Positions 1 to 64,000 of a DNA stretch of 64,000 bases are shown here, piece by piece (positions within the stretch are counted from its first letter, which is position 1; every line of letters starts with the position of its first letter). Below the pieces are notes generated by a model that saw only the letters and a list, made by a program, of their open reading frames with translations, was not told where the DNA came from and ran no database searches. The position numbers were made by a program, and so were the translations under genes. Location of the stretch: the IMG/VR virus record IMGVR_UViG_3300046167_000825, positions 124,001 through 188,000 of that record, one strand, 5' to 3'.

Positions 1-11
1 TCCCTAGTTCG

Positions 12-998
12 ATGTGGGAGTTCGATGAACAATCTCAGAGTATCTTCGTGAAACAGCCATTGGGTTTCACGGAGGGTAAGCCCTACATTGGATTGGTTCA
101 TAGCCATGAGGGAATCTTGATGGTGGGGGAGTATCACATTGAGGATGCGAACCAAGAGATTCTTGAGATACGGGAACATTACACAGCCCACATCTCTTAC
201 GCCCCCTCTAGGACAACTCGGACAAAGACTTATCTGAAAAACCAAGAGGTTCTTTCTTCCATCACTTTATTGAATGAAGGAACACCTCCCGTACCCAAGT
301 CGCAGATTGCAGATGCCATCAGAGAAGTCGTCTTTGGTTCGGGTGTTAATATAGTTCAAGATGTCTTGAACAATGACCCCGACTTCTTCTTAAATGACCC
401 TTCCAAGTCTGTCCAGTTCAGAGATCCCAATGAAAGATATGAAAACTTAGAGTTCATTGAGAAGGAACTCGGTTCAGATGAACCCATCACGATTGCTTGC
501 GATGACTTCAACGAGATCGATATCAGAGGCTCAAAGTTCTCAGAGAATGTGGAGGTCGTGAAGCAAACCCCTCAACAAATCGGTCATGTCATGCACTTAT
601 CTGGTGGGGCATATCTAGGGAAGACACTCGGGGGGACAAATGCCGTTCTGTACCCCAATGCTCCCGCCACACAAGTAGGGAAAGGATCAGTCCAACGACA
701 ATGTCTTATTAAACTTAGTGTGAAATCTATTCTGAGAGGGAACACGGAAGAAGCCCTAGAAGAAACAATCCCAACCCCAAATGACGGGGGGTCTTGTGAT
801 ATGGTTCTCACAGATTATGCCAACCTACACACGCACATCGCTCCTTGGGGTACTATGATAGCGTTAGGTCAGAACTCATTGTTGTACGGTGCTAGTTCTG
901 TTCAACCAACTGGCGTGCCAAGTTCTGGCACGGGGGTGACCCTTGAAGGAGGACTCCCTTTACCTCAACCAACCACAACTACAATAACTGTTCCATAA
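12..998 (+). CDS. Virion structural protein, probably the 3' part of a gene starting before the window
   Basis: Long ORF at the window edge, co-oriented with the tail gene block; no SD is visible before position 12. Confidence 0.55.
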   Translation: MWEFDEQSQSIFVKQPLGFTEGKPYIGLVHSHEGILMVGEYHIEDANQEILEIREHYTAHISYAPSRTTRTKTYLKNQEVLSSITLLNEGTPPVPKSQIADAIREVVFGSGVNIVQDVLNNDPDFFLNDPSKSVQFRDPNERYENLEFIEKELGSDEPITIACDDFNEIDIRGSKFSENVEVVKQTPQQIGHVMHLSGGAYLGKTLGGTNAVLYPNAPATQVGKGSVQRQCLIKLSVKSILRGNTEEALEETIPTPNDGGSCDMVLTDYANLHTHIAPWGTMIALGQNSLLYGASSVQPTGVPSSGTGVTLEGGLPLPQPTTTTITVP

Positions 999-1047
999 TT
1001 CTTCTATTGAAAGAAATAGATAACCCCAACACATTGGTGGAGATAAA

Positions 1048-1677
1048 ATGAAAAAAGATAAAATGAATCCTATGCGTGAAAATCTGAATGTCGGTTTCCA
1101 ACTAGCCCCTAGTGAAATTGGACAGTTTGTTAAGAAGGGGAGCATCATATTTGATATGTATGATCACGCAACGGGCGAGAGAACGTACTTCGAGAAAGAC
1201 AATGTCATTACATTGGATGCTGGTATCCACGCTGCTCGTTTATTCAAAGACAATGCCGAACCGAACTTCGGGATGTTTATGTTAGCGTGTGGGACGGGTG
1301 CAACTGGTGCGTTGTTATCCCCCGATGCTCCAGACCCCCGTCAGAGAAAACTCAACAACGAAATTGAAAGAAAAGGTTTCTCAGCAACAACTTTCAGAGA
1401 CTCTTTAGGGAACGCTGTGGCTTACCCCACCAACATTGTGGATTTCACATGCACTTACGGTGAAGCAGAAGCAGTGGGGCCTCTCAACGAAATGGGTTTA
1501 TTATCACCCCTTTCAGAGAACCCAGCCCAAAAGACACCGAACCCAAATAACTTCCCAACTAGAGATACAACAGTGGATGTCACGCAATATGATGTTCTTC
1601 TGAACTATCTCACTTTTGGTGTGATCACCAAGCCCTCAACGGCTACCCTAAGCATTTCCTGGCGAATTACGTTTTAA
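1048..1677 (+). CDS. Tail collar/baseplate-fibre junction protein (DUF3751-like)
   Basis: Pattern NVIT...A.GTG...L.NEI.RK...EAVGPLNEMGL...ITK...ISWRITF is typical of tail-collar proteins; GGAG SD. Confidence 0.65.
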   Translation: MKKDKMNPMRENLNVGFQLAPSEIGQFVKKGSIIFDMYDHATGERTYFEKDNVITLDAGIHAARLFKDNAEPNFGMFMLACGTGATGALLSPDAPDPRQRKLNNEIERKGFSATTFRDSLGNAVAYPTNIVDFTCTYGEAEAVGPLNEMGLLSPLSENPAQKTPNPNNFPTRDTTVDVTQYDVLLNYLTFGVITKPSTATLSISWRITF

Positions 1678-1727
1678 GAGATGTTTGGGATTTTGGGTTT
1701 TTTATAGATTTATGGAGATAGGATAAC

Positions 1728-4700
1728 ATGGCAATACATAAGAAATATTATACGGGTTCGACAGTATCAAGGGATTTGCCCACTGGCGAGCATTCGTTTT
1801 CTCAAGTGGTGTATCAGAGTGGTAAGCCCATTCTCGATGCTGAACTCAACCACGATCAAGATATCAAGCAAGAGATTCAGAAACTCTTAGGAGATGTCCA
1901 TCTTCCCTCTGGGTTCTTCCGTCATCAAACTAGACGGGACAACGAGGCTCAAGATTTTGAGTATGTGGCTGACACCAATACCTTCTTGATAAATAAACTT
2001 CAAGCAGTTGTTGCTGGTTTCCCCCTCACAGTGGAATACACCAACACGAACACAGATGGGAAGAACAAGATTCTTTTAGACCCTTCAACTCCCTTCGATG
2101 GGACTCCCCCAACTTTCAAGAGAACCGATTTCGTTTTCCTTGAAGTGTGGCAGAGTTTGGTTTCTCCTACTCCTTCAGCGAGTGGGTCAGTGCAAGTGGT
2201 TGATTTCTCTACTCTCCTCGCTGGTGATACCATCGTGGTTGTAGACCCGTCAACAGCAACGACAGAAACCTTCACGGCTACTGTCGGTATCCCAGTGGCT
2301 TTCCAGTTCCAAATAGGGGCTGACAACATCACGACAGCAACCAATCTCGCAACAGCGATAGATAATGATTCTACTCTTTGTTATGCGTTCAACCACGCAA
2401 CGGATATGGTGACTATCGTTTCACGAGTGGCTGGTGTTGTGGGTAATGCCTACACGCTCACAAGTTCTACTGCTTCCCTTTTGGCTAGTGGTGTGACCTT
2501 GAGTGGTGGTGGCCCAGATTATACAAATAAGCCCGACCAAAATCACCTTTTCAGACACGGGAACACAGATAGTTCTGTTGCTGTTGCTCTAGCAGATGAT
2601 CTCCAAGATCCAATCATCAACACCGAGAGTGGTAAGCGAGTGCAAGTCCAGTATCGGATTCGTGTGACGGGAAACACAGAGGGAGTCAACTTCAAGAATG
2701 AAGCAAATGGTTTCTCCAACCCAAGTATCTACGCACGAGGAAATGGTGCAAGTCCAGTGGTTGGTTATCGCTTCGTACCCGCAGACGGTACTACGGTCGA
2801 TGCCTCTAGTTCGGCTGTGGCATACGATAAGGTAGACAACGGTTTATACATTGCTGGGGACGGCACAGAGGCTTCTGCAAATGACTTAGGTTCAGTGGAT
2901 GGATTTGTTTATGCCATTCCTATTTGTTTTGTCTTCCGAAAGAATGATTCTAGTATCGGTGGTTTTGACCCAATGAACAATGTTTCGGGTGGTCTTCTTT
3001 CGACACACGGTGGTTTCACCAATACAAATGTTGGTGTCATTCCCGCTGGTGTTTCAGACCGACCCGATGGCTTGTTCCCCGATATTCTAGTTCGGAACGA
3101 TATCCTTGATTTAAGACGGCATGTTTCTCCCAATGGTGTAGACATGGCTGCCGAACTTCAGTATCAAATGAAATGTTTATTAGATGGAAACCTCAGAACT
3201 TGGAGTATAGACAGTGCTGACAAAAACACTTTGGGGGCTGGAACGGGTGATGTTTCAGTCAAACACTTGGTATGCAATGAGATTGGTCGATCCACAACAC
3301 ATGGGGGTTCTGGTTCTATTTCTGGTTCAACAACTCTCAGAGGGGACTTAGTCCGAAACTTTGATCATGTTGCTAGAAGATTTGGAGATCAACCCGTTGT
3401 TGAACGGGCAGTGTGGAGTTTTGTGCCAACCATAACACAAGCCTCAAATGCTGGGCGTTTTGTGGTTCAGAAGCAAGTGGGTGCGAAGTCTTGGGTGGAG
3501 GGTGACAAACTTCATTTGGATTTAACCACACTCAATGCCACGACATTGGGGGACTGGAATCCAGTCACACAATCATTCGGTGGGGCTTCGCCTTCACACA
3601 ATGCCTCCGTGACTGATTTTGCCCCTCCGTTTATGACAATCACAGACATCCTCATTTCTGTCCACGATGATGGACATTACGGAACAGCCATCAATCAAAA
3701 GGTTGAGATTCAATCGGTTGAGGGATTAGGGACAGATTATGTGATTATAACTCTCGATAGAAACGACCGAGTTGCCAATGGTGGTAATCCAGCGAACTTG
3801 GACTATCCTTTAGTTCGTGGAGAAACGGTTGCCGATGTCCATCCAGCACGAAGAATCTTCGTTGAGTATGAAATCACATATCCAGTCGGACATGGTTTGA
3901 CGGACACACCAGATGAAGTTCTCTCTCCCGATCCTTCCGTGTATTCTTACGGGGCAGTGTTGGAGAATGACTTTCAGTATCATGGTGGTGGAACAGACCA
4001 ACGCCCTTCTGACACCGAAGGTTTGATACCCATTGAGTTCCGTGAGGGATATCGTGAGGTAATGTTGGAATATAAAGCCAACAGAGTGGGGACGGGTATT
4101 GGTTCAGCCAATCCCATCACGGATTCATTTGTTAGTTCAGATGCTCTTTCCTTGATTGGTTGGAGAAGGTTTAACAATGATGCCGCCACTTCAATCACAG
4201 ATAGCATCACAACTACTGTCCATACAGTCGATATGCCGAACTCGGAGTTTGGATCTTCTTCAAGAGTCTTAAAACTCGACCCCACTGCTCCTTCTGGGGC
4301 GTTATCTGGAGCACAGACATTGATTGATGTTGAGTATTACGCTCAAGACCCCATCCCCAATCATGGGGCACAAGGATATCAACTCAGTGTTTATTATCGT
4401 AGCAATGCCCCACAGACATGTGGTGTGAAGGCTGGCGATTTAACAACAGACGGCTTGCCGACAACTTTGACAGTGACTCCTTTGGTTATGAGTCACGAGT
4501 TATGGAGTGGGACAGTCGGAATGGGTTCAGTGGAACTACCTTATCCTTACATTGCCCCTCTCGATCAGATTCCCATCAAGGATGACGGTTTTGGGATGGA
4601 AGTGAAGGAATGGTATTTCATGGCGACAGCCAATGTATCAATCGACAACTTCGATGCTGATAGTGGACTCTTGAATCTCCATACTTTCGTGCCAGCAGAT

Positions 4701-5042: not shown

Positions 5043-8000
5043 ATGCCTAGAAAAATAGATCCAAAGAACAAGATTAAAACGGGAACGGGGCTGGCTGGGA
5101 ATGATAGCATTGAAGCCAATGCCTTCCCCGATACCGATCCAAATATGGCAGTGGGTGTTGGGTTGGAAGCCCACATTAAAGACCCCGTTGACGCTCATGA
5201 AGCCTCTGCGATTTCATACGAGAATGAACCCGTGTATTTCGGGGATAATGTCGATGATGTCCTTGATGAGTTGGGTGGGCTTGTGCCTCCCCGACCTCCG
5301 ACTGTTGGGAACTGGAAAACCTATCTAGGTTTCGTGGGGATTACAGATTGGGGTGTCTTGAAACTCAATGATGACACTTTGGATAGTTCATTGTTTGTCC
5401 ACGCCAACATAGGCTCAAGCATTTATCCTTATTATCACAACCCTCCCAAGAGATGGACGGACATCCCTCCCTCTGAACCAAGTGGTGCTGACCTCAGTTC
5501 GGATATGGTGTTCAATGTTTCTGACGGTGCTTACACTGGTGGTGGTGACGGAGTCAGTTTTGCTGGGGGTTACACGAGAGGAACAGACATCAAAGAAACC
5601 CACAATATCTACAAAGACGGGAATGACCATGTGGTTGTTTCGGGTTCTCTTTTCCCAGCAGATAGAGGAACTCTCGCTTTGTTTTATGTACCACCACAAG
5701 GCACTCTAGCAGATGTGGTATGTATTGCTGCTCTCAACTGTGGTCAAGGCATTGAAGATGGTTGTGATGGCGAAACGGGCGGTATATGGAACTACGGACT
5801 CAATGACGACCCTTACCAGTTCCCTTCAGCGGCTAGTGGTCAGTATGATCTCCAAGAGTTGCATACGGGGTATGTCCGTAACAGTGTCACGACAATAACT
5901 TTGATTGAACCCTCAGCCGACCCTAGCATAGCCAATGTCAACTTCGCTGTTCCTCCAACATACATCGTGAGCATTGGCGATAAGATTTACATTGAAGGGA
6001 GTGATTCTACCCCTAGTGTGGATGGGGAACATGAAGTTGTGGGTTTCGGTTTGGGTCTGTATCAGATTGTTGCGACCATCACAGTCAATGGAACAACGGG
6101 GACAGTCGGACAACCCCTTGAGCCAAGTGATTTCAATCCTTCTCTCGCAGATGAGGCTTCTGGTCAAGTTCGTGAGGAATACACCATATTAGGTGGAACA
6201 TCTAGTTCGGTTCTTCCAACAAAAGGTGTGGATTCGAGAGATGACAACAACTTTTTCCGTTATCGGTTGCCTTATCTTGAGAACTACACCGAACTCCTTT
6301 GGACTCCCCCTTCCCAAACAAATAGATATTTCAAGAAACCTCCCGTGTCTCAGAATCCTTCTAGTGATTTAGATTTGGCTGGGAACTACATGGCTTTCAA
6401 TAAAGATTATTGGACATTCCAAGTGGCACGATATCGTCATCGCTTCGCTATCCCAAGTGGGGCGGGTTCTGAAAAGGGTTCTTTCTTCATTATACATTTC
6501 AAGAAAGAAGAATACTTTGAGAACTTGTTGTTGGACACTCTCGCACCAACTGAAGACCAAGTCTATTCTGCGACTTTAACGGATTGGGCTGATTTTGAAA
6601 GCGTGGATAATATCTATACTGTCGATGGGACAACCAAACCTTCTAGTTCGTATAACATCTTGAAATCGAGATTGTTCTCTGACCCAGAAGGGGAAGGCGT
6701 TGTGGTTAATACCCCTCCTTACACTTTGGAACGAACTATCGACACTGTTCTATATGTCAGTGGAATCCGTTACTTCAAGACAACGGCTGGTTTCGGTTTG
6801 AATACCGTCAACTTCACGATGAATAATCTGTTCCTCAACAGTTGGAGAATGGGTGATAAACAAGATGTCACCAAACAAGGGGAAGGCTTTCAAATGCCGA
6901 ATCCTTGTCATTACTTCACGGGGAGTTTCGGGAGAAACCTTTCGGGTGTGACACTCGCTCACGGAGATAGCAAAGGAAATCGCATTGAGATACCCTACAC
7001 TTTGTTGGGTGCATACGATCTAACCAATGCCCCTCTGCCAGCAGATGTTGCTTCTTACACCTCGCCTTCTATCTTCAATGTCGTTGCGACAAGCGAACCC
7101 GTTTTCTCATCGCAAGCGACTCCTATGGTCATTGCTAGACAACCTATCCGACACAAGGATACGAACTACACCGTTGGGGCTTCCGTCTTAGAGAATGCTG
7201 GGAAGAACATTATGGTTCATTCCACTGACGATAGTCTTTATCAAGACTCAACCACACCGATCCACTCGGCTGAACGAGATGTAATGGAGAACTTCCTCGA
7301 TGAGGGTTACCGTTGGATTTGGGATTTAGATGCTTCTGGGACACCCCCAGCAATCACAGCAGACGAGATTACAAGAATCTTGGGTGCTGGACTCCCGACA
7401 ACGGGCGTGATTGATATTCCAGTTCAGATTGGTGCTTCGGCTGTGTACGATGCGGCTAGTTTTATGGTGCAAGGAAGACATTTGAATGTGATTCTCGGAA
7501 CACCAGAGGCTCAGTTCGCGGGACTCCCTTTTAGGAATCCTCCTATGCAAGAAGGGGTTGCTCAACCAAATGCCCCTCGTGGTATCCTCATGTACCCCCA
7601 AAAGAATTACTTTGGGAACTATCGACCGTCTGCCGTTGATGGGGATTTAACCATCGCACAACCAGATTATTCGGGTGCTACTGGTGATAAAGTGTTCATA
7701 AGAGCCTTTGACACAGCGTTCTCCCGTTCGGTTACCCCACTCCCCGAAGCGATTGGGAGTTCCTTCTTCAAACTGAGAATACATGGGCTTCAATTGAATG
7801 ACTTCGCTTGGAGTGGTGGTGCTAGTGCTGGTGGCTTGGGTATCGCTATCCTTGTCAAACTAGCGGGATTAACCACTTGGATGGACATCGGACGAGTTGA
7901 TGGTTCGGGTGCATCCAAACAAGATGCTTTCTCTGATGGGGCTGGTTGTCAAATCAATGACCCCACAGAAACGAAGAATGGTGTTGATTCCTTGACGGGG

Positions 8001-8248: not shown

Positions 8249-8989
8249 ATGGGTGCAGAAAGTTTTTTTGATTATGGTCGTGGGCGTGACGCTCGCAGTA
8301 TTTTTAACTACCTCGTATCGGAGGCAGAAGCAGAATACGGTAGTCGAGGCTATACGGGTTCTATTGCCGAAAAAGCGGGTGAGGGATTCTTTGTCGTCAC
8401 ACAAGATGCTAAACCTATGAGTTATTGGCGAAGTGAAGAAGCCCGACAACAATTTGGTGATGGTGAAAAATGGGGGCCAGCACTTGCTGCTCCTTATGCC
8501 GAAGAAGTCGTTAAGGGTTCAAAGGATTACACCATTAAAGTGTCTGCGAGAACAAAGAGTGAGGCAGCCGATTTAGCAAGAGAAGCAATAAAGAACAAAG
8601 GTCGTTCTAAGGCTGGCACAACCATCCAAGTTGACTTAAAGGCTATCAAAAAAGTGAGTGATGCTGGGAAGGCTTCCATCAAGAAAACCAAACTGCGTTA
8701 TCCAGCACAATTTAAAGTGTTATATGATCTGAATGGACAAACTACAGTAGGGCAGACTACTTACGCCAATGTCACGGAAGCAAAGAAAGGCGTTGCAGCG
8801 TTTGCTGCGAAGTTCGTTAACGGTCAAACAAGGTATAATCCCATCGGTATAGTGAAAACCGAAGGTGTTCAAGGTTATGAAGTGACGGCTAGTTCTAAAA
8901 TGCCGAAATGGGAAATAACGGGAACACGGAAACAAGTGGCTGTGGGTCGAGCAATCGGTTGGGTCTTTTGGGGCTGGGCTTCTTCCTAA
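8249..8989 (+). CDS. Phage hypothetical protein (MGA..F / GYTGSIAEK / KWGPA / GWxFxGWASS motifs)
   Basis: Clean 246-aa ORF behind a late-type motif. Confidence 0.6.
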   Translation: MGAESFFDYGRGRDARSIFNYLVSEAEAEYGSRGYTGSIAEKAGEGFFVVTQDAKPMSYWRSEEARQQFGDGEKWGPALAAPYAEEVVKGSKDYTIKVSARTKSEAADLAREAIKNKGRSKAGTTIQVDLKAIKKVSDAGKASIKKTKLRYPAQFKVLYDLNGQTTVGQTTYANVTEAKKGVAAFAAKFVNGQTRYNPIGIVKTEGVQGYEVTASSKMPKWEITGTRKQVAVGRAIGWVFWGWASS

Positions 8990-15885: not shown

Positions 15886-16467
15886 ATGCAAAACATTTTA
15901 ATGTCAATAATCACGGTGTTTCTCTTTATCACAGCACCTTACCCAGCACACGCTGAAGAACCAACCCCTTCTGAAACCACAGAAGAAGTTGCCCCTACCC
16001 CCTCTGAAGAGGTTGCTCCTAGCGACACAGAAGCCGAAGCAGAAAAGAAAGTAGAGGAAGTTGAGAAAGTAGAGGAAGTTGAGAAAGTAGAAGCAACTGA
16101 AGAAGTTGTCGAAACCATCCCAACCACAGATCAAGAAGCCGTTGAAGACGCTCTTGCTTTATGGAAGGCTTTGAACTCACAAGATTGGCCCCTCGCTATC
16201 GGATTTCTAGTGATGATTCTCGTCTACATCGCAAATCGTTTCGGTCTGAAAGACAAGATTGGAAAGAAAGCCATCCCTTATGTATCATTGGCGATTGGTG
16301 TTCTAGCCGCTGTTGGTGTCGCTCTTGCGAGTGGTAGTTCTGTGGCAGTTGCACTTGAGGCTGGCGTTCTGGCTGGACTTGCTGCTGTTGGTTCTTGGGA
16401 AGTCCTATTCAAGAAGATTCTTGGGGACTCCAACGACACAAGTCACGAAGTGACAGAAGAAGCGTAA
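15886..16467 (+). CDS. Signal-peptide membrane protein with an acidic linker and about 3 TM helices (holin-like C-terminus)
   Basis: Signal peptide ending AHA; EEVEKV repeats; hydrophobic C-terminal segments; start refined to the ATG after GGAGG. Confidence 0.6.
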   Translation: MQNILMSIITVFLFITAPYPAHAEEPTPSETTEEVAPTPSEEVAPSDTEAEAEKKVEEVEKVEEVEKVEATEEVVETIPTTDQEAVEDALALWKALNSQDWPLAIGFLVMILVYIANRFGLKDKIGKKAIPYVSLAIGVLAAVGVALASGSSVAVALEAGVLAGLAAVGSWEVLFKKILGDSNDTSHEVTEEA

Positions 16468-17074: not shown

Positions 17075-17809
17075 ATGATTATCCGAAAAAGAGATGCCAT
17101 CGAAACCCTCAACAAACTTAAAGATGGATCTGCTGACTTGATATTGCTTGATCCCTTTTACAATGAATGGGATGACTGGCTTGAAAAAGGAATCATCGAA
17201 CTAGCAATGTCCAAACTGAAAGAGAGTGGGAATCTATTATGTTTCACAGCCCAACCTTTTGACTTCAATCTCCGAGTACATCTCCAAGAATCTTTCAGAA
17301 GGGAACTCATCTGGCACATGCCAAAGCGACCAAAGTGGGTGAGCAATAAACTTCCCCTCGTGACACACCAAAAAATATTCTGGGCAGTGAAAACAAAGGA
17401 GGAGAACTTCTTCCAACCACGAACTGGATTGGATTATTCTCCTCACACGGTCACGGGCAACAAAGGACACATGGTGTTCCGTGATTTCAAAGGAAAACTA
17501 CGCCCATTTGAGAAACACGAAGAAGGGATATGGATGAATGATGTCCAAGTGTTTGACAAACCCCACAATGAAAAGAGAGAAAGTGCAAAGCCCCTTGAAC
17601 TAATGGAGGTGTTAATCCGATGTCTGTGTCCAATAGAGGGGAAAGTTGTAGACCCCTTCGCTGGGAGCGGTGTCGTCTGTTATGCTTGTCAAAACTTGGG
17701 GATCACCGATTGTGTGGCAACCGATATTGACTTTGAAATGTTGGGGGAAGTGAAGAAAGACATAGGTTTTCTTCAAGGCTTCATGGGATTCACAGCAAAT
17801 CCTTCGTGA
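17075..17809 (+). CDS. Orphan N6-adenine/N4-cytosine DNA methyltransferase (beta class)
   Basis: DPFY (DPPY-type motif IV) precedes the DPFAGSG SAM-binding motif. Confidence 0.85.
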   Translation: MIIRKRDAIETLNKLKDGSADLILLDPFYNEWDDWLEKGIIELAMSKLKESGNLLCFTAQPFDFNLRVHLQESFRRELIWHMPKRPKWVSNKLPLVTHQKIFWAVKTKEENFFQPRTGLDYSPHTVTGNKGHMVFRDFKGKLRPFEKHEEGIWMNDVQVFDKPHNEKRESAKPLELMEVLIRCLCPIEGKVVDPFAGSGVVCYACQNLGITDCVATDIDFEMLGEVKKDIGFLQGFMGFTANPS

Positions 17810-24727: not shown

Positions 24728-24798
24728 CATGTCAAGAATCTAGATATACCAGTCAGAAGAGCGAGAGGGGCATAAAGCCCCCCTCAGCGACATGATAC

Positions 24799-28195: not shown

Positions 28196-28720
28196 ATGGC
28201 TACATTGCACAATCATTCTTCTACTTGCTCTCACACTGGAGGTCGTATGACCACAAATAACTCAGCACCACATCTTAATGTGGCATCCCTCAAGGGTATG
28301 TCTGTCAGCCAATTCTTTGGTATCCGAAAGGGTATGACCCTCACAACTTGTTGTGTGTGTTCAAAGCCCCTCGAAGATGCCCAATCAGTAACGGATGGTG
28401 TCGGCCCTATCTGCTCTCGCAAATATGGCTATCACACTCATGTTCCTACTCAAGAGGCTATCCAAGCAGCACTCGGTCACCTTGCTCTTCTGCCTATCGC
28501 GGCAGAGTTGGATGTGATGAACTACCTTCTGGCTAACAAGGGTGATGAACGAAAGTTCGCAAACATCCTTGTGGCGTACTGCTCTCACCTCACCTCAATC
28601 GGGAAGGATGCCGATGTGTTCATGTACACGGGTGCTATCAAGGCACTTGGTTTGGACAAATTGGCAGAGCAGTTGAGAATATCCCGTTGTGATATTCGGC
28701 ATCGTATCCAATACCGATGA
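28196..28720 (+). CDS. Zinc-finger protein (DUF6011-like)
   Basis: CCVCSKPLED..SV..GVGPIC..KY motif. Confidence 0.65.
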   Translation: MATLHNHSSTCSHTGGRMTTNNSAPHLNVASLKGMSVSQFFGIRKGMTLTTCCVCSKPLEDAQSVTDGVGPICSRKYGYHTHVPTQEAIQAALGHLALLPIAAELDVMNYLLANKGDERKFANILVAYCSHLTSIGKDADVFMYTGAIKALGLDKLAEQLRISRCDIRHRIQYR

Positions 28721-30825: not shown

Positions 30826-31257
30826 ATGTCCAGACCAAGTTTAGGTTACAGCAATTATTACTGGATTCGACAAGACCAGAAGAAAGCAGAAGCGAAAGCC
30901 AGCGAACTAGAACTACAAGATGACAACACATCTAATGGCCCAGCAGCCTCTGCTGCCGCTAATCCTAACAATCCTCCTACCCTAGAGGAAAAAACCAAAG
31001 ATTCTTGGAAGTCCCAGCATGATTCTCTGGTTGTTAACCCACAAAATAGACTGGAATCGAGCGAACTAGCCGCAGCACAACATGATTCCCCAGAATCGCT
31101 GGTTGAATCACCCCCAGACACTCAAGAATCTTACAGTTCTCTCCCAGAGTCCCTCGAAACTCCAGTGATTCCCGTCCCTCCAGAAGTGATGCCTCCGAGT
31201 TTCCCTCTAGTGAATCAAATCACATCGTGGAAACCCCAAACAGATTCCGAAAAGTGA
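30826..31257 (+). CDS. Low-complexity (P/E/S-rich) hypothetical protein
   Basis: AAGGAG SD. Confidence 0.5.
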   Translation: MSRPSLGYSNYYWIRQDQKKAEAKASELELQDDNTSNGPAASAAANPNNPPTLEEKTKDSWKSQHDSLVVNPQNRLESSELAAAQHDSPESLVESPPDTQESYSSLPESLETPVIPVPPEVMPPSFPLVNQITSWKPQTDSEK

Positions 31258-34990: not shown

Positions 34991-35428
34991 CTACCGTATT
35001 CGGCAGACAGCGAGAACTTTGAGGGCAGCGACTGGAGTGTCAGACCAAACGACACAGCCATCGGGGTCAACCAGTTCGATGAGGTCACCGTTGGAACGAA
35101 CTTCCCCGATTTCTCTGGGGAACGACCCAACGGGCTTCTGGATTTGATAGCCCTTATCTATCTTCTGGTTGAACACTTTGAATGGGCGTGTTGTGCCGAA
35201 GCCTTTCGTTTGACCCCTTGTGCCAACCTTCCCCCATCGTCTACCAATGCTCCCATCTATACGAGTTTCGATTCTCCAGAACTTGTGAGAACCGTCTGTG
35301 GTGTTCTTCAGAACTACATACGGGAAGAAGCCCTTGTTGCATAGTTGTTTGAACTTTATGTATCCACCCACTTGAATGGGTTGCCCATGAAGTTCGTGTT
35401 TGTGCCAGGCTGAAAGATTTACTTGCAT
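34991..35428 (-). CDS. WGR-domain protein
   Basis: SHKFWRI...RRWGKVGTRGQ...K..KGY. Confidence 0.8.
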   Translation of the reverse strand: MQVNLSAWHKHELHGQPIQVGGYIKFKQLCNKGFFPYVVLKNTTDGSHKFWRIETRIDGSIGRRWGKVGTRGQTKGFGTTRPFKVFNQKIDKGYQIQKPVGSFPREIGEVRSNGDLIELVDPDGCVVWSDTPVAALKVLAVCRIR

Positions 35429-35700: not shown

Positions 35701-35862
35701 ATCGGCAACTTTCGGAGGATTTCTGCAACTTTTTCATTTTTTCTGCAACTTTTTACGAAATCCTGTACTTTTTCTGCTGTTTTTTTCATGATTTCTGCAA
35801 AAACTCTCCAAAAGTTGCAGAAAACCGTCAAAAAATGCAGAAAAGTATCAAAAAGTTGCAGA
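35701..35862. repeat. Phased (~20 bp) CTGCAACTTTT/AAAAGTTGCAG array (copy 2)
   Basis: TGCA cores at 35724, 35744, 35796, 35816, 35836 and 35857; left units are inverted relative to right units. Confidence 0.7.
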
Positions 35863-38813: not shown

Positions 38814-38824
38814 AATCACAAAAT

Positions 38825-38929: not shown

Positions 38930-38960
38930 TGCGGTTGCATATATAAAGGAGATCCGTATA
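38930..38960 (+). promoter_or_regulatory. Class-I phage promoter motif
   Basis: TGCGGTTG-N16-CCGTATA. Confidence 0.8.
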
Positions 38961-39004
38961 GAGATTAGTCAATCAATCAAATCATTATTCAAGGAGAATA
39001 AATC

Positions 39005-40339: not shown

Positions 40340-40454
40340 TCGGCTCGGCTCTCGGAGGGGGGGATTTCCCTCCCCTATCGCTTCTGGGGGTAGTCAAGAA
40401 TCTACATGACTACCCTCGATAGTTCCTATATCCACTGCTCTTTATAAGGATGAT

Positions 40455-40485
40455 TGCGGTTGCATATATAAAAGAGATCCGTATA
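40455..40485 (+). promoter_or_regulatory. Class-I phage promoter motif
   Basis: TGCGGTTG-N16-CCGTATA; near-identical to the 38930 cassette. Confidence 0.8.
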
Positions 40486-40527
40486 GGGATTAGTCAATCA
40501 ATCAATATATTCATAGGAGAATAAATC

Positions 40528-44482: not shown

Positions 44483-45139
44483 ATGAAAGATGTTGAACTA
44501 TGGCATGGGGATTGTCTAAAATTGATGAAAGACATTGAAGACAATAGTGTTGATTTGTGTCTCACGGACATACCGTACGATGTTGTCAATAGATCCAGCA
44601 ATGGCTTGAGATCCCTTGATAAAGGTACGGCAGATATTTTAACCTTTGATTTGACTGACTTTTTAGACGAGGTCACAAGAATAAGCAAGACGGTCATTAT
44701 CTTTTGTGGTAAAGAGCAATTCTCTACAATTTATGCCTACTATGCCTCTAAAAAAGGGACAACTAGACCTATTGTATGGCAAAAATCAAATCCATCCCCT
44801 ATGAACGGTCAATATGTATATTTATCGGGGATTGAAATGGCAGTGTGGTTTAAGTCAAAAAAATCAAAAACATTTAATGCCCACTGTAAAAACACAGTAT
44901 TCAAGCATCCAAATGGCAGAAATAAACTACACCCAACAGAGAAAAATCATAGGTTACTAGAAGAATTAATACTTGATAACACCAATGAGGGCGATCTTGT
45001 GCTCGATCCGTGTGGTGGTAGTTTCTCGACTGGGATTGCTTGTCTAAAAATCAAGCGTAGATTTAGGGGTATAGAAAAAGACCCAATGTATTTCGAGATA
45101 GCAAAGAAACGCATTGAAGAACATCAAAAAACAATTTAA
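44483..45139 (+). CDS. Orphan N6A/N4C DNA methyltransferase (beta class)
   Basis: GDCL...VDLCLTDIPY...HPTEK...VLDPCGGS..TG...GIE; more AT-rich than its neighbours. Confidence 0.88.
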   Translation: MKDVELWHGDCLKLMKDIEDNSVDLCLTDIPYDVVNRSSNGLRSLDKGTADILTFDLTDFLDEVTRISKTVIIFCGKEQFSTIYAYYASKKGTTRPIVWQKSNPSPMNGQYVYLSGIEMAVWFKSKKSKTFNAHCKNTVFKHPNGRNKLHPTEKNHRLLEELILDNTNEGDLVLDPCGGSFSTGIACLKIKRRFRGIEKDPMYFEIAKKRIEEHQKTI

Positions 45140-47257: not shown

Positions 47258-48796
47258 ATGTCGAAAGAGATATATTTTGGGGAAGACTTCCGAACTCAAA
47301 TACTGAAGGGTGCTGACATATTTGCGAACACCGTGACCAAGACAATGGGGCCATTTAGTGGCACAGTCATGATGAATCGAATGGGGGGTTTGCTCCAAAC
47401 GAAAGATGGTGTGACGGTCGCCCGTGAGATCAATCTGAAGAACCCCGTAGCGAATATGGGTTGTCAAGTGTTGAAGGAGGCTTGTATCAAGGTCAATGAC
47501 GAGGCTGGTGATGGCACGACCACCACTGCTTGTTTGACCAACGCCATTTTGAGAGAGGGGCATAAGATGATCACGGCTGGGTTTGACCCCATGACTCTCC
47601 AAAGGGAACTCCGTCAAGCGAGTGATAAAGTTATCAAGACCTTGTGGGATAATGCCTTCCCCGTTGAGGAGGAATCCGAACTTCATTCAGTTGCAATGAT
47701 TTCTTGTAACGGTGACCGAGAGGTAGCCGATGTCTTAACTGAGGCTTGTCTTGCTGTCGGTAAAGATGGGACAGTGGTTATCGAAGAAGGGAAGGGCATT
47801 GGTATCGAGATGGATTTCAAGGAGGGCTTTGAGTTATCTTGTGGGGCAGTGAGTCGTCATTTTATGGACAACGCCCTTGAGAAGAAGTTGATTTCCCCTT
47901 TGGTTGCGATTGTTCCGAAAGTGATTACATCCATGAAGGATGTCCATTCGATGCTTGAAGAATCTTCCCAGTTCCCCCAGAATGAGTTGTTGTTAATTTG
48001 TTATGGGTTGGAAGGGGAAGCCTTGAAGTTTATGGCGACCAATCATGTGAAGGGTGTTTGTACATCAATGCCCATCAATATCGCTGGGGTATCTCTGAGG
48101 AGAGCCGAGTACATGAAGGACTTGGCGGCTCTTTGTGGTTGTGAAGTTTTAGAGGTGGATCAGTATGACATCACGAAGTTCAATACGGACTGGTTTGGGT
48201 CTTGCTTGGAGGTTCTTGTCCAAGAGAAGAAAACCATCTTCTCGGCTTTCGATGAAGCCGAAACCTCCATCGAAAGGAGAGTCAACGAACTCCAAACAGA
48301 TATGGCGAGTTCGATTTCAGATTACGACCGAGATGACATCACAAAAAGAATATCCAAACTGAAGGGTGGTTTCTGTTTGGTTTCAGTTGGTGGTCACACC
48401 GAACTGGCTATGAAAGAGAAACGTGCTCGGATTGAGGATGCACTTGGTGCTGTTCAGAGTGCTTTGAAAACTGGGATAGTCGCTGGTGGTGGGGCTTCTT
48501 ATCTTTGGGCATCTCAAGTTCTGAGTGACGATGGTGGTGAAGGTATTCTTAAACGGGCTTTAAGGAAACCAATGGAAACGATAGTGGGCAATGCTCGGCA
48601 GAACGGTGACTTCGCTGTGGAGATTCTGCTCCGTGATGGTGAACATGCTTGGCACGGGTGGGATGTCCGTAAGAAAAAGGTGATTGATCTTTATAAGACA
48701 AAGATTATTGACCCTCTCCTCGTGGCAGAGAAAGCCGTTGAGAGTTCGGTTTCTGTTGCTGGATTGATGATTACTGCTGAGGCTGGTATCGTTTGA
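47258..48796 (+). CDS. groEL: Phage chaperonin, GroEL/Cpn60-like
   Basis: TKDGVTVAREI, AGDGTTT, KEKRARIEDAL...GIVAGGG, IIDP; no GGM tail. Confidence 0.92.
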   Translation: MSKEIYFGEDFRTQILKGADIFANTVTKTMGPFSGTVMMNRMGGLLQTKDGVTVAREINLKNPVANMGCQVLKEACIKVNDEAGDGTTTTACLTNAILREGHKMITAGFDPMTLQRELRQASDKVIKTLWDNAFPVEEESELHSVAMISCNGDREVADVLTEACLAVGKDGTVVIEEGKGIGIEMDFKEGFELSCGAVSRHFMDNALEKKLISPLVAIVPKVITSMKDVHSMLEESSQFPQNELLLICYGLEGEALKFMATNHVKGVCTSMPINIAGVSLRRAEYMKDLAALCGCEVLEVDQYDITKFNTDWFGSCLEVLVQEKKTIFSAFDEAETSIERRVNELQTDMASSISDYDRDDITKRISKLKGGFCLVSVGGHTELAMKEKRARIEDALGAVQSALKTGIVAGGGASYLWASQVLSDDGGEGILKRALRKPMETIVGNARQNGDFAVEILLRDGEHAWHGWDVRKKKVIDLYKTKIIDPLLVAEKAVESSVSVAGLMITAEAGIV

Positions 48797-53907: not shown

Positions 53908-56034
53908 ATGAAAACTTTTGAGTTATATGGTGATGTGTATCCAGAGGACAGCAAGTACTCTCGTTTGATGGCTCAGTACATAATGACACCGAACTACGAT
54001 TCCGACTCAAAAAAAGAGTGGGAACTGTATAGGGATTTCGCAGTCAAAAAACGAATGGGCGACAACGAGATGAAAGCGTTCTTGGTCGCCAAAGATTCTA
54101 GCCATCACAATATGATTCTCGGAAGACCTCCTAGAGATTCTCGTGACTTAGAACAAGTGTATTCTCGCCAGTTCGGAAAGAGTGCTTCTTCACGGGAAGA
54201 CGAAAAGGAACTGACGGAAATCTTTCGTTTGTTGCAGAGAAGGTTCGGTCAAGCGAGGCGTTGGCATGAGTCTGGTTTTGAGGATCAGTATTTCCACATT
54301 GACAACGGCATAATGTTCTTCGCATATACCACGGGGCTTCGTGGTGAAGATGCCGACAACTCTGATTTGGAAGGTGGAATCCGTAGAGATAACAAAGACG
54401 ATGTCCAACAGTTCTTGGAGAGAAAAGGGTACGAGTTTATCCTAGAATGTGCCAACGCATATTGCGACACTTTAATGTTGACCTTGAAAGGGAAAGAGTG
54501 GATGAAGAACAATCGACCACGATACGCCAAACAAGCAGAGGATGAGTGTTCGGGGATGACCAACACAATGGATTATGTTCATTGCCGAGCAAAGAAGATG
54601 GAAAAAGAAAATGGCACATCAGCCGACAAAGCGTTTCCGACAGCGTGGTCTATTGCTTGTAAATACAAGCGTGACCAGTTGAGCGATGCCGATGAACATT
54701 GTCAGAAAAAACCTAATGAATATTTCAAATCTAAAAAAGCAAATGGAGAACCCATGAAAAAGAAAGCGGCTAGAGTGCCTCAAATCCTAATTGAAACGAT
54801 AATGCCAGCCTTGTACCAATGGAGGGTTGACAAACTTTCTCGTGATCTTCGTAGTGATCTCAAAGAACTCGCCATAGGTGACATGATGGAAGAACTTGTT
54901 GTGAAAGATCACTATGATGAGTTGTTTGCACTCAAAGATAACTCAGAGGCTATGGCTTGGATTGGAGTAGATTCTAAGACCTACAAGAAAGCCATCATGC
55001 AAACTTTGATTGCTGCTCGTCAGATGAAGTTGGGTTCTTCCGAACTAGAACTTATGGCTGGACACACCCCAGAGTCCTTCAAGAAAATGATGAAAGACAA
55101 TCCCGAACTAGCCGAAGAATGGGAGAAGCAAATCAAAGAGAACGAAGGTGTTGTCGAGAAGAAATCTTCTGAAGCAGATATCGTTGCCAATTTGGTTGAG
55201 AAATGGGCTGGTTGTGAGAAACTCCCTAACGAGAAGATGCAGCAAATGTGCGAGGATAAGAAAGAAGAATCCAAGAAGGAAGACAAAGAGGATGGGGAAG
55301 ACAAGAAAGACAAGAAAGCCCATGACAAAACAGCCCGTCTGATGAAGCGACAGATCAAGATTCTTGAGACCTATCTTCGCACCCAAACTTCTATCCCTAT
55401 GTTTTTTGAGGCTCTTCCTCCGAAAATCCAACAAGCATTACAGCGAGTCAAGTACCAAGAAACTCTTGAGATGGATGTTGAGAGATGGTTGTCTGATTAC
55501 CGATTGGAGCAACAAATAAATCAAAACCGTTGGGCATCTAATGGCTCTACGAAGGAGAACCCCATGAACAAAGAAGCAAAAACTGCTTTGAGAACCCTTA
55601 CTGCTAGTTGGGGACTCACAGCCGATGAAACCTACGAGATGTTAGCCGAAGACGAACTAGGGGAGTACCTTGCCGAAATGGAAGCCGAAATGTGGGCTGA
55701 AGAAATGGAAGCGGGTGCATCAAAGAACCCAGCGAACGCTGGTTTCAAAAAGTATCAAATACAGAAGAAGCCCTCTGAGCCTTATTACCGAGAGAAATGG
55801 TGGAAGCCCAACACTTCTAACGAAGACAAAGGTGGGAACGGTGCTGGTGGTACTGCCAACTTCAATCGCAACTACCACGAGTATGGTGAGAAGGCTAATG
55901 TGAGCGAGAAGGAGTACCAAAAGTCCTATTACCAAAAACGCTTTGTGGAAAACAAGCCCATCAAGCGTAAGACTTGCCCTAAGTTTCATGGGAGAAAGGG
56001 GCCTTGTGATGAATCCGTAAGTAAGGCAAAGTAA
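53908..56034 (+). CDS. Modular polyprotein-like hypothetical protein (putative head-internal protein)
   Basis: Many K/R-x-A-delimited segments; two internal SD+ATG starts. Confidence 0.7.
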   Translation: MKTFELYGDVYPEDSKYSRLMAQYIMTPNYDSDSKKEWELYRDFAVKKRMGDNEMKAFLVAKDSSHHNMILGRPPRDSRDLEQVYSRQFGKSASSREDEKELTEIFRLLQRRFGQARRWHESGFEDQYFHIDNGIMFFAYTTGLRGEDADNSDLEGGIRRDNKDDVQQFLERKGYEFILECANAYCDTLMLTLKGKEWMKNNRPRYAKQAEDECSGMTNTMDYVHCRAKKMEKENGTSADKAFPTAWSIACKYKRDQLSDADEHCQKKPNEYFKSKKANGEPMKKKAARVPQILIETIMPALYQWRVDKLSRDLRSDLKELAIGDMMEELVVKDHYDELFALKDNSEAMAWIGVDSKTYKKAIMQTLIAARQMKLGSSELELMAGHTPESFKKMMKDNPELAEEWEKQIKENEGVVEKKSSEADIVANLVEKWAGCEKLPNEKMQQMCEDKKEESKKEDKEDGEDKKDKKAHDKTARLMKRQIKILETYLRTQTSIPMFFEALPPKIQQALQRVKYQETLEMDVERWLSDYRLEQQINQNRWASNGSTKENPMNKEAKTALRTLTASWGLTADETYEMLAEDELGEYLAEMEAEMWAEEMEAGASKNPANAGFKKYQIQKKPSEPYYREKWWKPNTSNEDKGGNGAGGTANFNRNYHEYGEKANVSEKEYQKSYYQKRFVENKPIKRKTCPKFHGRKGPCDESVSKAK

Positions 56035-62936: not shown

Positions 62937-62972
62937 GATTCTCTCCATCTTACAGAAAGAATACCCAAAAAC

Positions 62973-63281
62973 TTATTTCTTTGGGAAAGTTTTCATCGGG
63001 TCAAGGCTAGGGAGTTCGGTTGCTCTGATTGTTGGGATAGTGATAAGCCCGATCTCAACTCCTTCCCACCTCTCTGGTGTGAAAACCAAGTCTTTCAAAT
63101 TATCGGGGGATAACTTCAAGATATGATGGTCACCACCCCAGTGAACATAAGACTCTTGAACTGTTGCACCACCACATGCACCACAAGAACACCAACGACA
63201 GACATCCTCTAACTTGAAGATATCAAAACATTTACGACAGAATATTAACAGCATTGCAGCCTCCAAAACAGTTGGTAGCAT
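62973..63281 (-). CDS. Cys-rich hypothetical protein
   Basis: LIFCRKCFDIFKL...CSCG..GG; the start may be internal. Confidence 0.5.
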   Translation of the reverse strand: MLPTVLEAAMLLIFCRKCFDIFKLEDVCRWCSCGACGGATVQESYVHWGGDHHILKLSPDNLKDLVFTPERWEGVEIGLITIPTIRATELPSLDPMKTFPKK

Positions 63282-63377
63282 ACAATCTCATAGGGATACA
63301 CTTATTGGATTCTGAAATAGAGTCCTTATTGCAATACTCAATAAATAATCTCCTTCTATATGTAGGAGGAAAACCAA

Positions 63378-63734
63378 ATGTCTGATGAATTGCCCGATGG
63401 ATTAACGAACTTAATCTCACAGAATATGGAGAGGATGTTGGAATGGGAAATCCTCCTCAGTAAAACCCTCGACAACGGCAGTGTCTTGTCTATCCGAAAA
63501 GGGGACTTCATCGAAAAAGAATGGTGGGCTGTTTTTGTGGAAGCCCATGTCGACAATGAAGACCATCTCAAAGATATCCCCCCACAAGATGAATGGGGTG
63601 AGTTTGCACTGATGTCTTTCCAAATCGGTGATCGGGGAATGGTCTTATGGGTTTTTAGTTCAATCAATGAGTTGACCCTTGAACTGACGAGACTCTTTGG
63701 GATGTTCACAGCGAAAACAACCACCGAAATCTAA
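63378..63734 (+). CDS. Hypothetical protein
   Basis: AGGAGG SD. Confidence 0.6.
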   Translation: MSDELPDGLTNLISQNMERMLEWEILLSKTLDNGSVLSIRKGDFIEKEWWAVFVEAHVDNEDHLKDIPPQDEWGEFALMSFQIGDRGMVLWVFSSINELTLELTRLFGMFTAKTTTEI

Positions 63735-64000
63735 AAAAGATTCAAAAAAGTTGGCGTGTCAAGATAAAAGAGTGTATCTTTATTTTTGAGTCATTTCGCA
63801 CGATTTTTTCAGAGACCAATCACTTTGTGGTGTGGTTTCTTATGCTGTTTTTTGGGGGTTTTTATGGTCGCTGTTGCTGGTGAGGTTTTATATACAAAGC
63901 AAAAACATGGTTCTTTACCGATAAAGATATTGGATTCGGGGTTTCTCTTGGGTGAGAAAAAGTACGATACAGAGAAAAGATTATTTGAAGAACTGTACGG

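What the first reader, a model, noticed from the sequence alone, without database searches (positions are those of the whole stretch)
1..64000. Near-absence of CAGG/CCTG, CCGG, AGCT and GCGC
Seen by eye, not exhaustively counted: I noticed CCTG only at 1658 and 35762, CAGG only at 35406, and no AGCT, CCGG or GCGC. Each 4-mer would be expected on the order of 100-250 times. Codon pairs route around them: Thr/Ala/Ser-Gly as NCG GG or NCT GG, and Glu-Leu often as GAA CT, which explains the abundant GAACTA/TAGTTC. Known: palindrome avoidance reflects Type II restriction. The non-palindromic 4-mer CAGG/CCTG is unusual, since CCAG/CTGG is common. Inference: a host defence recognises a very short asymmetric site, possibly C(A/C)GG.
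Basis: partly seen in the sequence, partly recalled or inferred. Interest (0 to 1): 0.62.

Follow-up and report, generated by a model that had tools for sequence, protein, structure and literature searches.

The report
Marine jumbo phage erases restriction sites
A 289-kb marine phage has removed about forty short DNA words that restriction enzymes cut, including one unusual asymmetric 4-letter word (CAGG/CCTG), so completely that four amino-acid pairs have almost vanished from its proteins.

Summary
In the window AGCT, CCGG and GCGC are absent, CAGG occurs once (35406) and CCTG twice (1658, 35762). In the whole 289-kb phage contig the counts are CCGG 0/715 expected, GCGC 0/715, AGCT 1/1100 and CAGG+CCTG 17/1778. 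CGCG, ACGT and GGCC are at 1-6% of expectation. A synonymous-codon shuffle still predicts 270-814 copies of each word.

Thirty-nine minimal words are below 10% of expectation, and 31 of 64 hexamer palindromes are absent. Most survivors have no synonymous escape (Gly-Pro, Trp-Pro, Pro-Gly). As a result, the proteome has lost Pro-Gly (8 against 255 expected), Trp-Pro, Gly-Pro and Pro-Trp.

Related phages with 85-90% identical capsid proteins each erase a different set of words. One erases CCTGA/TCAGG, a documented restriction-modification (R-M) target. Others erase CCAG/CTGG.

Best reading: extreme restriction-site avoidance against many enzymes at once, including an uncharacterised activity on the 4-bp asymmetric site CAGG/CCTG. 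CCWGG does not explain it, and the proposed merged site C(A/C)GG is not supported. The host is unknown.

The parts
1..64000 (.). Window-wide absence of AGCT, CCGG and GCGC. Near absence of CAGG/CCTG, CGCG, GGCC and ACGT, plus many longer palindromes.
   Evidence: The same holds over the whole 289-kb contig.
1658..1661 (+). Surviving CCTG, codons TCC-TGG (Ser-Trp) in the + strand gene 1048-1677. A synonymous escape exists.
   Evidence: genome position 125658.
35406..35409 (-). Surviving CAGG on the + strand. On the coding (-) strand it reads GCC-TGG (Ala-Trp). A synonymous escape exists.
   Evidence: genome position 159406.
35762..35765 (.). Surviving CCTG in an intergenic stretch.
   Evidence: genome position 159762.
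1478..1481 (+). Surviving GGCC, Gly-Pro (GGG-CCT). No synonymous escape, because every Gly-Pro spells GGNCC.
2511..2514 (+). Surviving GGCC, Gly-Pro (GGC-CCA). No synonymous escape.
8475..8478 (+). Surviving GGCC, Gly-Pro (GGG-CCA). No synonymous escape.
16187..16190 (+). Surviving GGCC, Trp-Pro (TGG-CCC). No synonymous escape.
28403..28406 (+). Surviving GGCC, Gly-Pro (GGC-CCT). No synonymous escape.
30937..30940 (+). Surviving GGCC, Gly-Pro (GGC-CCA). No synonymous escape.
47349..47352 (+). Surviving GGCC, Gly-Pro (GGG-CCA). No synonymous escape.
56000..56003 (+). Surviving GGCC, Gly-Pro (GGG-CCT). No synonymous escape.
7517..7520 (+). Surviving CGCG (TTC-GCG, Phe-Ala). Escapable. Two more lie at 23860 (CCC-GCG) and 28498 (ATC-GCG).
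17075..17809 (+). Phage DNA methyltransferase, N6_N4 (beta) class, motif IV DPFY, 244 aa (P0001). Target unknown.
   Evidence: PF01555 at 2.4e-19; best solved relatives are small adenine MTases and M.RsrI.
44483..45139 (+). Phage DNA methyltransferase, N6_N4 (beta) class, motif IV DIPY, 218 aa (P0002). Full-length homologue of the Helicobacter adenine MTase 5HEK/5HFJ. Target unknown.
   Evidence: PF01555 at 2.0e-23; 5HEK at E 3.6e-26 over residues 4-212.

Best explanation
The window belongs to a marine jumbo phage whose genome has been purged of the recognition sequences of a very large and varied set of host restriction enzymes. The contig is 289 kb and estimated about two-thirds complete. 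It belongs to a large clade with a capsid protein distantly like that of Bacillus phage G. A phage DNA that lacks a site cannot be cut at it, so every mutation that creates a site is removed by selection. Here this has happened for at least 39 minimal words. There are seven 4-mers: AGCT, CCGG, GCGC, CGCG, GGCC, ACGT and the asymmetric CAGG/CCTG. There are five 5-mers: CGWCG, GGWCC, CGSCG, GACGC and GCGGA. There are 27 hexamers, including the GGNNCC and RAATTY families and, partly, CCNNGG. CAGG/CCTG is most simply the target of one further restriction activity with a 4-bp asymmetric site, of Type IIS/IIA or Type III kind, that has not been characterised. The phage also carries about eight methyltransferase genes, which presumably protect other sites that are not avoided. 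Shown: the depletion, its independence from codon usage and from flanking bases, the codon and dipeptide consequences, and its lineage specificity. Inferred: that host restriction enzymes are the selective agent, and that one enzyme reads CAGG/CCTG.
For: (1) Magnitude. O/E is 0-0.06 for seven 4-mers over 289 kb under composition, Markov and synonymous-shuffle expectations. Thirty-one of 64 hexamer palindromes are absent and 41 are below 0.1. There are 39 strand-merged minimal depleted words. (2) Apart from CAGG/CCTG and a few others, the words are the recognition sequences of well-known Type II enzymes (my knowledge of standard specificities, not looked up in REBASE): AluI, HpaII/MspI, HhaI, BstUI, HaeIII, MaeII, AvaII, Hpy99I, NlaIV, BsaJI/SecI and ApoI, plus the asymmetric HgaI GACGC, BsmBI CGTCTC and BsrBI CCGCTC. 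(3) Selection acts on DNA, not protein. Codon routing is absolute. Of 43 GGCC survivors, 36 have no synonymous escape, and 8 of 17 CAGG/CCTG survivors are Pro-Gly. (4) Proteome effect. Control phages show PG and GP at 0.44-1.08. None of 168 PG positions in relatives' orthologues is kept. (5) Lineage specificity. Contigs with 85-90% identical MCP erase different sets, as expected if hosts with different R-M repertoires drive it. (6) Asymmetric targets recur in the clade: CCTGA/TCAGG 12/373 in G003 and CCAG/CTGG 28/545 in G001. CCTGA is a documented R-M specificity: Type III M.Hin1209I (PMC4525171), Type IIG Cj0031 CCYGA (PMC4889913), and a Type IIS motif in the Bacteroides fragilis group (PMC10333322). 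A 4-bp asymmetric Type III site exists (CGAG, PMC4525171). (7) It is not an artefact. The same DNA is held in seawater metagenomes from 21 studies, and two other IMG/VR contigs of the same phage show the same profile (L020 and L021).
Against: The host is not identified, so no cognate R-M system has been shown for any word. No enzyme or methyltransferase with CAGG/CCTG specificity turned up in full-text searches, and REBASE could not be consulted. A large survey found avoidance almost only for orthodox Type II sites, very rarely for Type III and not for Type IIG (PMC6286503). An asymmetric target is therefore atypical.
Confidence: 0.72

Rival explanations
1. CAGG/CCTG is not one 4-bp site but the sum of several 5-bp or longer specificities that together cover every flank, for example CCWGG plus CCTGA/TCAGG plus two or more others.
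For: The phage avoids dozens of specificities, so a few more would not be surprising. CCWGG alone is erased in G001 and G002, and CCTGA/TCAGG alone in G003, so both sub-specificities exist in the clade's hosts.
Against: At least four independent 5-mers would all have to be driven to about zero. The residual counts are uniformly tiny in all eight flank classes (0-12, and the 12 are mostly forced Pro-Gly). No relative among the 80 sampled shows an intermediate state.
Confidence: 0.13
2. The words are avoided because the phage itself makes frequent-cutting nucleases to destroy host DNA, and must lack their sites in its own unmodified genome.
For: The genome encodes several HNH-type, homing-type and other endonuclease families and a PD-(D/E)XK nuclease. 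Avoided sets differ between relatives as gene content does.
Against: About forty specificities would need about forty nucleases. The nuclease hits are families usually annotated as homing or recombination enzymes, and none was linked to a methyltransferase or a short site. The avoided words are the classic host Type II repertoire.
Confidence: 0.06
3. CAGG/CCTG is a CRISPR protospacer-adjacent motif (PAM) that the phage has eliminated to escape spacer acquisition and interference.
For: PAMs are short and asymmetric, and depletion would be seen on both strands. PAM depletion in phages has been examined in the literature (PMC4246573, seen).
Against: From my own knowledge, known PAMs are mostly 2-3 specified bases and usually tolerate variants, so total erasure of one 4-mer is not expected. 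The word sits among about 38 other erased words that are restriction sites. No host or CRISPR system is known here.
Confidence: 0.03
4. The depletion is a mutational by-product, not selection: deamination of 5-methylcytosine at methylated sites, driven by the phage's three C5-methyltransferase loci or by host enzymes.
For: All seven 4-mers contain C. Transition products such as AACT/AGTT-containing hexamers are over-represented, for example CGAACT/AGTTCG at 4.3-fold in all frames.
Against: Mutation pressure lowers frequencies but does not drive them to 0 in 289 kb. It cannot explain why survivors are precisely the sites with no synonymous escape. It also cannot explain the replacement of Pro-Gly at conserved positions, or the loss of A/T-only words such as AAATTT and of RAATTY.
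Confidence: 0.03

Closest known systems
Restriction-site avoidance in virulent dsDNA phages (surveyed by Rusinov et al. 2018, PMC6286503)
   Same: Short recognition sequences, mostly palindromic orthodox Type II sites, are eliminated completely or almost completely from a phage genome as a passive anti-restriction strategy.
   Different: The breadth is far greater: 39 minimal words and 31 of 64 hexamer palindromes absent. Several asymmetric words are erased, a class for which the survey found little or no avoidance. The avoidance also has a clear protein-level cost, with four dipeptides purged. My searches found no report of that, though the check was not exhaustive.
R-M systems acting on CCTGA/TCAGG: Type III M.Hin1209I (ModA9; PMC4525171), Type IIG Cj0031 CCYGA (PMC4889913), Type IIS motif in the Bacteroides fragilis group (PMC10333322)
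   Same: These are asymmetric sites that contain CCTG/CAGG. Exactly this 5-mer is erased in the clade-mate G003 (12/373).
   Different: In the focal phage the fifth base does not matter: CCTGA, CCTGC, CCTGG and CCTGT are all about zero. The selecting specificity is one base shorter, and no characterised enzyme was found for it.
Four-base asymmetric R-M sites such as AciI CCGC, MnlI CCTC/GAGG (both from my own knowledge) and Type III ModA4 CGAG (PMC4525171)
   Same: They show that 4-bp non-palindromic recognition exists in Type II and Type III systems. CCGC is itself partly depleted here (O/E 0.19).
   Different: CCTC/GAGG is not avoided here (O/E 1.57). CAGG/CCTG is a different word with no known cognate enzyme in the sources I could search.
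CCWGG (EcoRII / Dcm-type) avoidance
   Same: CCWGG is strongly depleted here (10/396) and in G001 and G002 (0/171 and 3/260).
   Different: CCWGG accounts for only about a quarter of expected CAGG/CCTG occurrences. The other three quarters are gone too, while CCAG/CTGG, the other half of CCWGG, is at normal frequency.

Membership tests
Restriction-site avoidance (passive anti-restriction) | Specific short words far below expectation after correcting for composition, neighbouring-base effects and codon usage | tested here: met
   O/E 0-0.09 under three null models.
Restriction-site avoidance (passive anti-restriction) | The depleted words are recognition sequences of restriction enzymes | tested here: inconclusive
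   Most words match textbook Type II specificities from my own knowledge, but REBASE was not available. CCTGA is confirmed from papers. No source was found for CAGG/CCTG or GCGGA/TCCGC.
Restriction-site avoidance (passive anti-restriction) | Selection acts at DNA level: synonymous routes are used wherever available | tested here: met
   absolute codon routing. Of 43 GGCC survivors, 36 have no synonymous escape.
Restriction-site avoidance (passive anti-restriction) | The host encodes the cognate R-M systems | not testable with these tools
   Host not identified.
Restriction-site avoidance (passive anti-restriction) | The pattern differs between related phages with different hosts | tested here: met
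   relatives with 85-90% identical MCP erase different word sets. Their hosts are also unknown.
Target of a Type III or Type IIS/IIG system (for CAGG/CCTG) | Asymmetric site depleted in both orientations and independent of flanks | tested here: met
   CAGG 6 and CCTG 11, with all flank classes about zero.
Target of a Type III or Type IIS/IIG system (for CAGG/CCTG) | A characterised enzyme or methyltransferase with this specificity | tested here: not met
   Full-text searches gave only the 5-bp CCTGA/CCYGA systems. REBASE was not consulted.
CCWGG (EcoRII/Dcm-type) avoidance as the full explanation of CAGG/CCTG loss | Depletion confined to CCAGG/CCTGG contexts | tested here: not met
   ACCTG 0/466, GCCTG 1/384, TCCTG 4/441, CCTGA 4/466, CCTGC 1/348, CCTGT 2/441.
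   Relatives erase CCGG but keep CAGG at 0.77-0.95. At Pro-Gly the phage uses CCWGG 8 times and CCSGG 0 times.
CRISPR PAM depletion | The word matches the PAM of a CRISPR system of the host | not testable with these tools
   No host and no spacer data.

The most novel reading that the evidence does not exclude
The host population of this marine phage carries a still uncharacterised restriction activity that reads the 4-bp asymmetric word CAGG/CCTG, a one-base-shorter relative of the known CCTGA systems. Together with CCGG, GGCC, GGWCC and CCNNGG enzymes, it has closed every synonymous route for certain dipeptides. Restriction enzymes have therefore directly constrained which amino-acid pairs the phage's proteins may contain: Pro-Gly is down about 30-fold, and all 168 ancestral PG positions have been replaced.
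Probability: 0.5. Interest if true: 0.78.

Novelty: new variant of a known kind. Interest (0 to 1): 0.68.

Why it matters
Site avoidance is usually described as a modest effect limited to synonymous changes and to a handful of palindromes. This phage shows how far it can go. About forty words are erased from a genome of more than 289 kb, asymmetric sites are included, and four dipeptides are nearly removed from some 350 proteins. That makes restriction enzymes a measurable force on protein sequence space.

It also gives a practical read-out. The erased words predict the R-M repertoire of an uncultured marine host, so they can be used to search for that host among metagenome-assembled genomes and methylomes. 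They also point to at least two specificities, CAGG/CCTG and GCGGA/TCCGC, for which I found no characterised enzyme. The clade has 545 relatives with near-identical capsids but different erased sets, which makes it a natural system for timing how fast avoidance is gained and lost.

Tried and rejected
I replaced it with programmatic enumeration of all palindromes and words, so nothing was lost.

2. Megablast of 20 kb of the window against the phage collection found no match.

3. Host inference failed. A GroEL scan of reference genomes returned one unrelated MAG at 35% identity. No photosystem gene was found in G000, G003 or G004. Only one tRNA is present. Pfam hits to ROS/MucR and a CcrM-like MTase hint at Alphaproteobacteria. 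The list of erased sites resembles cyanobacterial enzyme repertoires from memory. Neither hint is evidence, and I assign no host.

4. A PolA-based search for relatives in IMG/VR found nothing. The MCP search worked.

5. The specificity of the phage MTases could not be read from sequence. The C5 enzymes match only the catalytic half of M.HhaI/M.HaeIII, and NCBIfam gives superfamily-level hits.

6. The population SNP test with read laying was underpowered: 40 variants, of which 1-2 create forbidden words against 4-6.6 expected. It carries no weight either way.

7. LR745208.1, initially taken as the closest relative, lacks the pattern. G003, at first called a sister, shares only 63 of 269 proteins at about 40% identity.

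8. Rejected explanations: CCWGG as the full cause, C(A/C)GG as a single site, 5mC deamination, and assembly artefact.
Full report
**1. The observation**

- In the 64-kb window AGCT, CCGG and GCGC are absent.
- CAGG occurs once (35406) and CCTG twice (1658, 35762).
- Expected numbers are 174-246 from base composition and 43-200 from a second-order Markov model.

The window is positions 124001-188000 of a 289,014-bp IMG/VR virus contig estimated 66% complete. I loaded the whole contig, and the depletion is genome-wide:

| Word | Observed | Expected |
|---|---|---|
| CCGG | 0 | 715 |
| GCGC | 0 | 715 |
| AGCT | 1 | 1100 |
| CAGG+CCTG | 17 | 1778 |
| CGCG | 10 | 715 |
| ACGT | 57 | 1100 |
| GGCC | 43 | 715 |

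That model keeps protein sequence and codon usage, yet still predicts 271-814 copies of each word. Observed/expected is therefore 0-0.09. CCAG and CTGG come out at 0.95 and 0.99.

**2. The depletion is much broader than reported**

An iterative scan looked for minimal words below 10% of expectation. It gives seven 4-mers, five 5-mers and 27 hexamers.
- The 5-mers are CGACG/CGTCG 0/396, GGACC/GGTCC 0/396, CGCCG/CGGCG 4, GACGC/GCGTC 29 and GCGGA/TCCGC 8.
- As degenerate patterns: CCNGG 10/715, GGNCC 43/715, CGNCG 4/715, GGNNCC 24/715 and CCNNGG 49/715.
- Of the 64 hexamer palindromes, 31 are absent and 41 are below 0.1. Ten of the absent ones do not contain an erased 4-mer: AAATTT, AGATCT, ATGCAT, CCATGG, CTGCAG, GAATTC, GCTAGC, GGATCC, GGTACC and GTGCAC.
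- Several asymmetric words that I recognise as Type IIS sites are also erased: GACGC, CGTCTC and CCGCTC.
- CCGC/GCGG stands at 0.19.
- Not avoided: TCGA, CTAG, GANTC and CCTC/GAGG (1.57). GATC and CATG are only mildly low (about 0.6).

**3. The survivors show how strong the selection is**

- **GGCC:** 36 of 43 have no escape. Thirty are Gly-Pro, 5 are Trp-Pro and 1 is a Met-Ala in a constraining context. Gly-Pro is GGN-CCN, so it always spells GGNCC. The phage always writes GGSCC and never GGWCC, which explains why every surviving GGCC reads GGGCC or GGCCC.
- **CAGG/CCTG:** 8 of 17 are Pro-Gly, which always spells CCNGG. The phage always writes CCWGG and never CCSGG. Three more are intergenic and six are escapable.
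- **ACGT and CGCG:** the survivors are mostly escapable, so selection on these two is weaker.
- **Ranking:** CCGG is selected against more strongly than CAGG/CCTG, and GGWCC more strongly than GGCC.

Codon routing elsewhere is absolute:
- Gln before a G-starting codon is CAA 1041 times and CAG 0 times. Elsewhere CAG is 43% of Gln codons.
- Glu-Leu is never GAG-CTN.
- Ser/Thr/Ala before Gly use NCA once and NCC never.

**4. The avoidance reaches the proteins**

Among all 400 dipeptides in the 88,262-residue proteome, the four rarest relative to expectation are exactly those that force a forbidden DNA word:

| Dipeptide | Observed | Expected |
|---|---|---|
| Pro-Gly | 8 | 255 |
| Trp-Pro | 5 | 50 |
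| Gly-Pro | 30 | 255 |
| Pro-Trp | 10 | 50 |

- A 50-kb stretch of the relative LR745208.1 shows 0.78-1.08 for the same four.
- Clade-mates G001-G003 show Pro-Gly and Gly-Pro at 0.44-0.59.
- In 252 alignments between the focal proteins and orthologues from relatives (mean identity 57%), none of 168 Pro-Gly positions is kept. They are replaced mostly by PA, PN, PH or AG.
- Trp-Pro is kept 0 of 15 times and Pro-Trp 0 of 12. Control dipeptides are kept 12-40% of the time.
- These counts are not independent, because many relatives share columns, but the zero is clear.

**5. What the phage is**

- PHROGs and Pfam find a major head protein, portal, PolA, RecA/UvsX-like recombinase, helicases, ribonucleotide reductase, PhoH, a sigma factor, GroEL, CobS/CobT-like proteins and several homing-type endonucleases.
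- The capsid protein (genome 257761-258672) is 86% identical to that of the 485-kb uncultured phage LR745208.1. It is 49% identical to a Tunturiibacter phage and 40% identical to Bacillus phage G.
- IMG/VR holds 545 contigs with a related capsid protein. The best 80 are 84-100% identical.
- The DNA of the window is held in seawater and marine metagenomes from 21 studies, so the sequence is not an assembly artefact.
- The host is unknown.

**6. Relatives give the key comparison**

I profiled every relative locus of at least 10 kb and three longer contigs.
- L020 and L021 are the same phage and show the same profile.
- A group with 40-43% GC, including the 227-kb G003, erases ACGT, CCGG, CGCG and GCGC but keeps AGCT (0.9-1.6) and CAGG/CCTG (0.77-0.95).
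- G003 also erases CGWCG, RCATGY, CYCGRG, GDGCHC-type words and about 30 hexamers. It erases the asymmetric 5-mer CCTGA/TCAGG (12/373) while CCTGC, CCTGG and CCTGT remain.
- GC-rich members erase AATT, CTAG and TTAA.
- G001 and G002 erase AGCT, CCWGG, CTCAG, CAGTG and several Type IIS-type hexamers. CCAG/CTGG stands at 28/545 in G001 and 104/822 in G002.

Avoidance is therefore a clade-wide strategy with lineage-specific targets. Asymmetric targets recur. CCGG loss is separable from CAGG loss.

**7. CAGG/CCTG**

- It is the lowest of the 120 asymmetric 4-mers by 11 standard deviations.
- All eight flank classes are near zero, so CCWGG cannot explain it.
- CCTGA is a documented target of a Type III methyltransferase (M.Hin1209I, PMC4525171) and of a Type IIG enzyme (Cj0031, CCYGA, PMC4889913). 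It is also a Type IIS motif in the Bacteroides fragilis group, where it is depleted in the bacteria's own genomes (PMC10333322).
- A 4-bp asymmetric Type III site, CGAG, is documented in PMC4525171.
- I found no source for an enzyme that reads CAGG/CCTG itself and could not consult REBASE.
- The survey of about 4000 viruses by Rusinov et al. (PMC6286503) found avoidance essentially only for orthodox Type II sites. Total loss of an asymmetric word is therefore unusual.

I take it as the footprint of an uncharacterised 4-bp asymmetric restriction activity. A union of several 5-bp specificities is the main rival.

**8. The phage's methyltransferases**

- Both are beta-class N6_N4 enzymes. Their motif IV reads DPFY and DIPY, which from general knowledge points to adenine methylation.
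- The second is a full-length homologue of the Helicobacter adenine MTase in 5HEK/5HFJ. From memory that enzyme acts on GAGG, a word that is not avoided here.
- Outside the window there are three C5-cytosine MTase loci, one of them split, at 225.3, 227.2 and 267.0 kb. There is also a cluster of interrupted CcrM-like genes at 86.8-92.0 kb and an MT-A70 gene at 103.8 kb.
- Their targets cannot be read from sequence.

The phage therefore combines methylation with avoidance. Which sites each strategy covers is an inference that long-read methylation data would settle.

**9. Other tests**

- Laying contigs of four other seawater runs on 6 kb of the window showed a nearly clonal population. This is inconclusive.
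- No alternative genetic code was needed.

**10. Verdict**

The kind of phenomenon, restriction-site avoidance, is known. Three things are unusual: its extent, the inclusion of a 4-bp asymmetric word with no known enzyme, and above all the near removal of four dipeptides from the proteome.

Noticed in passing
Genome-wide; about 229 copies, of which 142 lie in frame as GAT-ATC: GATATC is the only hexamer palindrome that is strongly over-represented in the focal phage (229 against 84 expected, 2.7-fold). In clade-mate G003 the same word is erased (1/68).
   Followed up: partly
Genome-wide, in all three frames and both orientations: CGAACT/AGTTCG is 4.3-fold over-represented (586 against 136), and GAACTC and GAACTA about 3-fold. 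The excess is not confined to the Glu-Leu frame, so rerouting of GAG-CTN explains only part of it. GAAC/GTTC as a 4-mer is 1.76-fold over.
   Followed up: partly
L006:6761-11980 (genome 86761-91980): A cluster of CcrM-like N6_N4 methyltransferase ORFs appears interrupted. Two ORFs carry only the N-terminal part, and one 636-aa ORF has a weak intein-splicing hit. A 577-aa ORF has the two halves of the domain about 300 residues apart.
   Followed up: no
L011 (genome 225274-228142): There are two neighbouring C5-cytosine methyltransferase loci. In the second, the C-terminal motifs lie in a separate 61-aa frame, so it may be split or frameshifted.
   Followed up: no
L006:13703-16399 (PolA) against LR745208.1: The PolA match to the 485-kb relative comes in three pieces spread over 4.9 kb of the relative. 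This suggests insertions (inteins or homing elements) in one of the two genes.
   Followed up: no
L012:17761-18672 (MCP) and loci L020-L099: The capsid protein is 84-90% identical across contigs whose GC ranges from 33% to 65% and whose other proteins are only about 40-57% identical. That is an unusually conserved capsid in a very diverse clade.
   Followed up: partly
Window 37484-41910 and 47258-48796: A CobS-like AAA_5 ATPase lies on the minus strand, next to two CobT/vWA-like proteins. A phage GroEL follows further on (PHROG E 2.5e-114), only 35% identical to the nearest bacterial GroEL found.
   Followed up: no
Window 1728-24727: Four very large ORFs (1103, 1053, 1772 and 1465 aa) have no Pfam family and almost no PHROG match. 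They are presumably virion or tail proteins.
   Followed up: no
Window 24001-28000: There is a sharp local GC-skew reversal (-0.195), coinciding with a short block of minus-strand genes (24799-26980).
   Followed up: no
Genome, from Pfam scan A1 (position not located): One protein matches the Volactin family (E 2.6e-71) and another ROS/MucR (E 1.8e-12). One tRNA-Ala (L013:8830-8904) sits just downstream of the 405-aa C5 methyltransferase.
   Followed up: no
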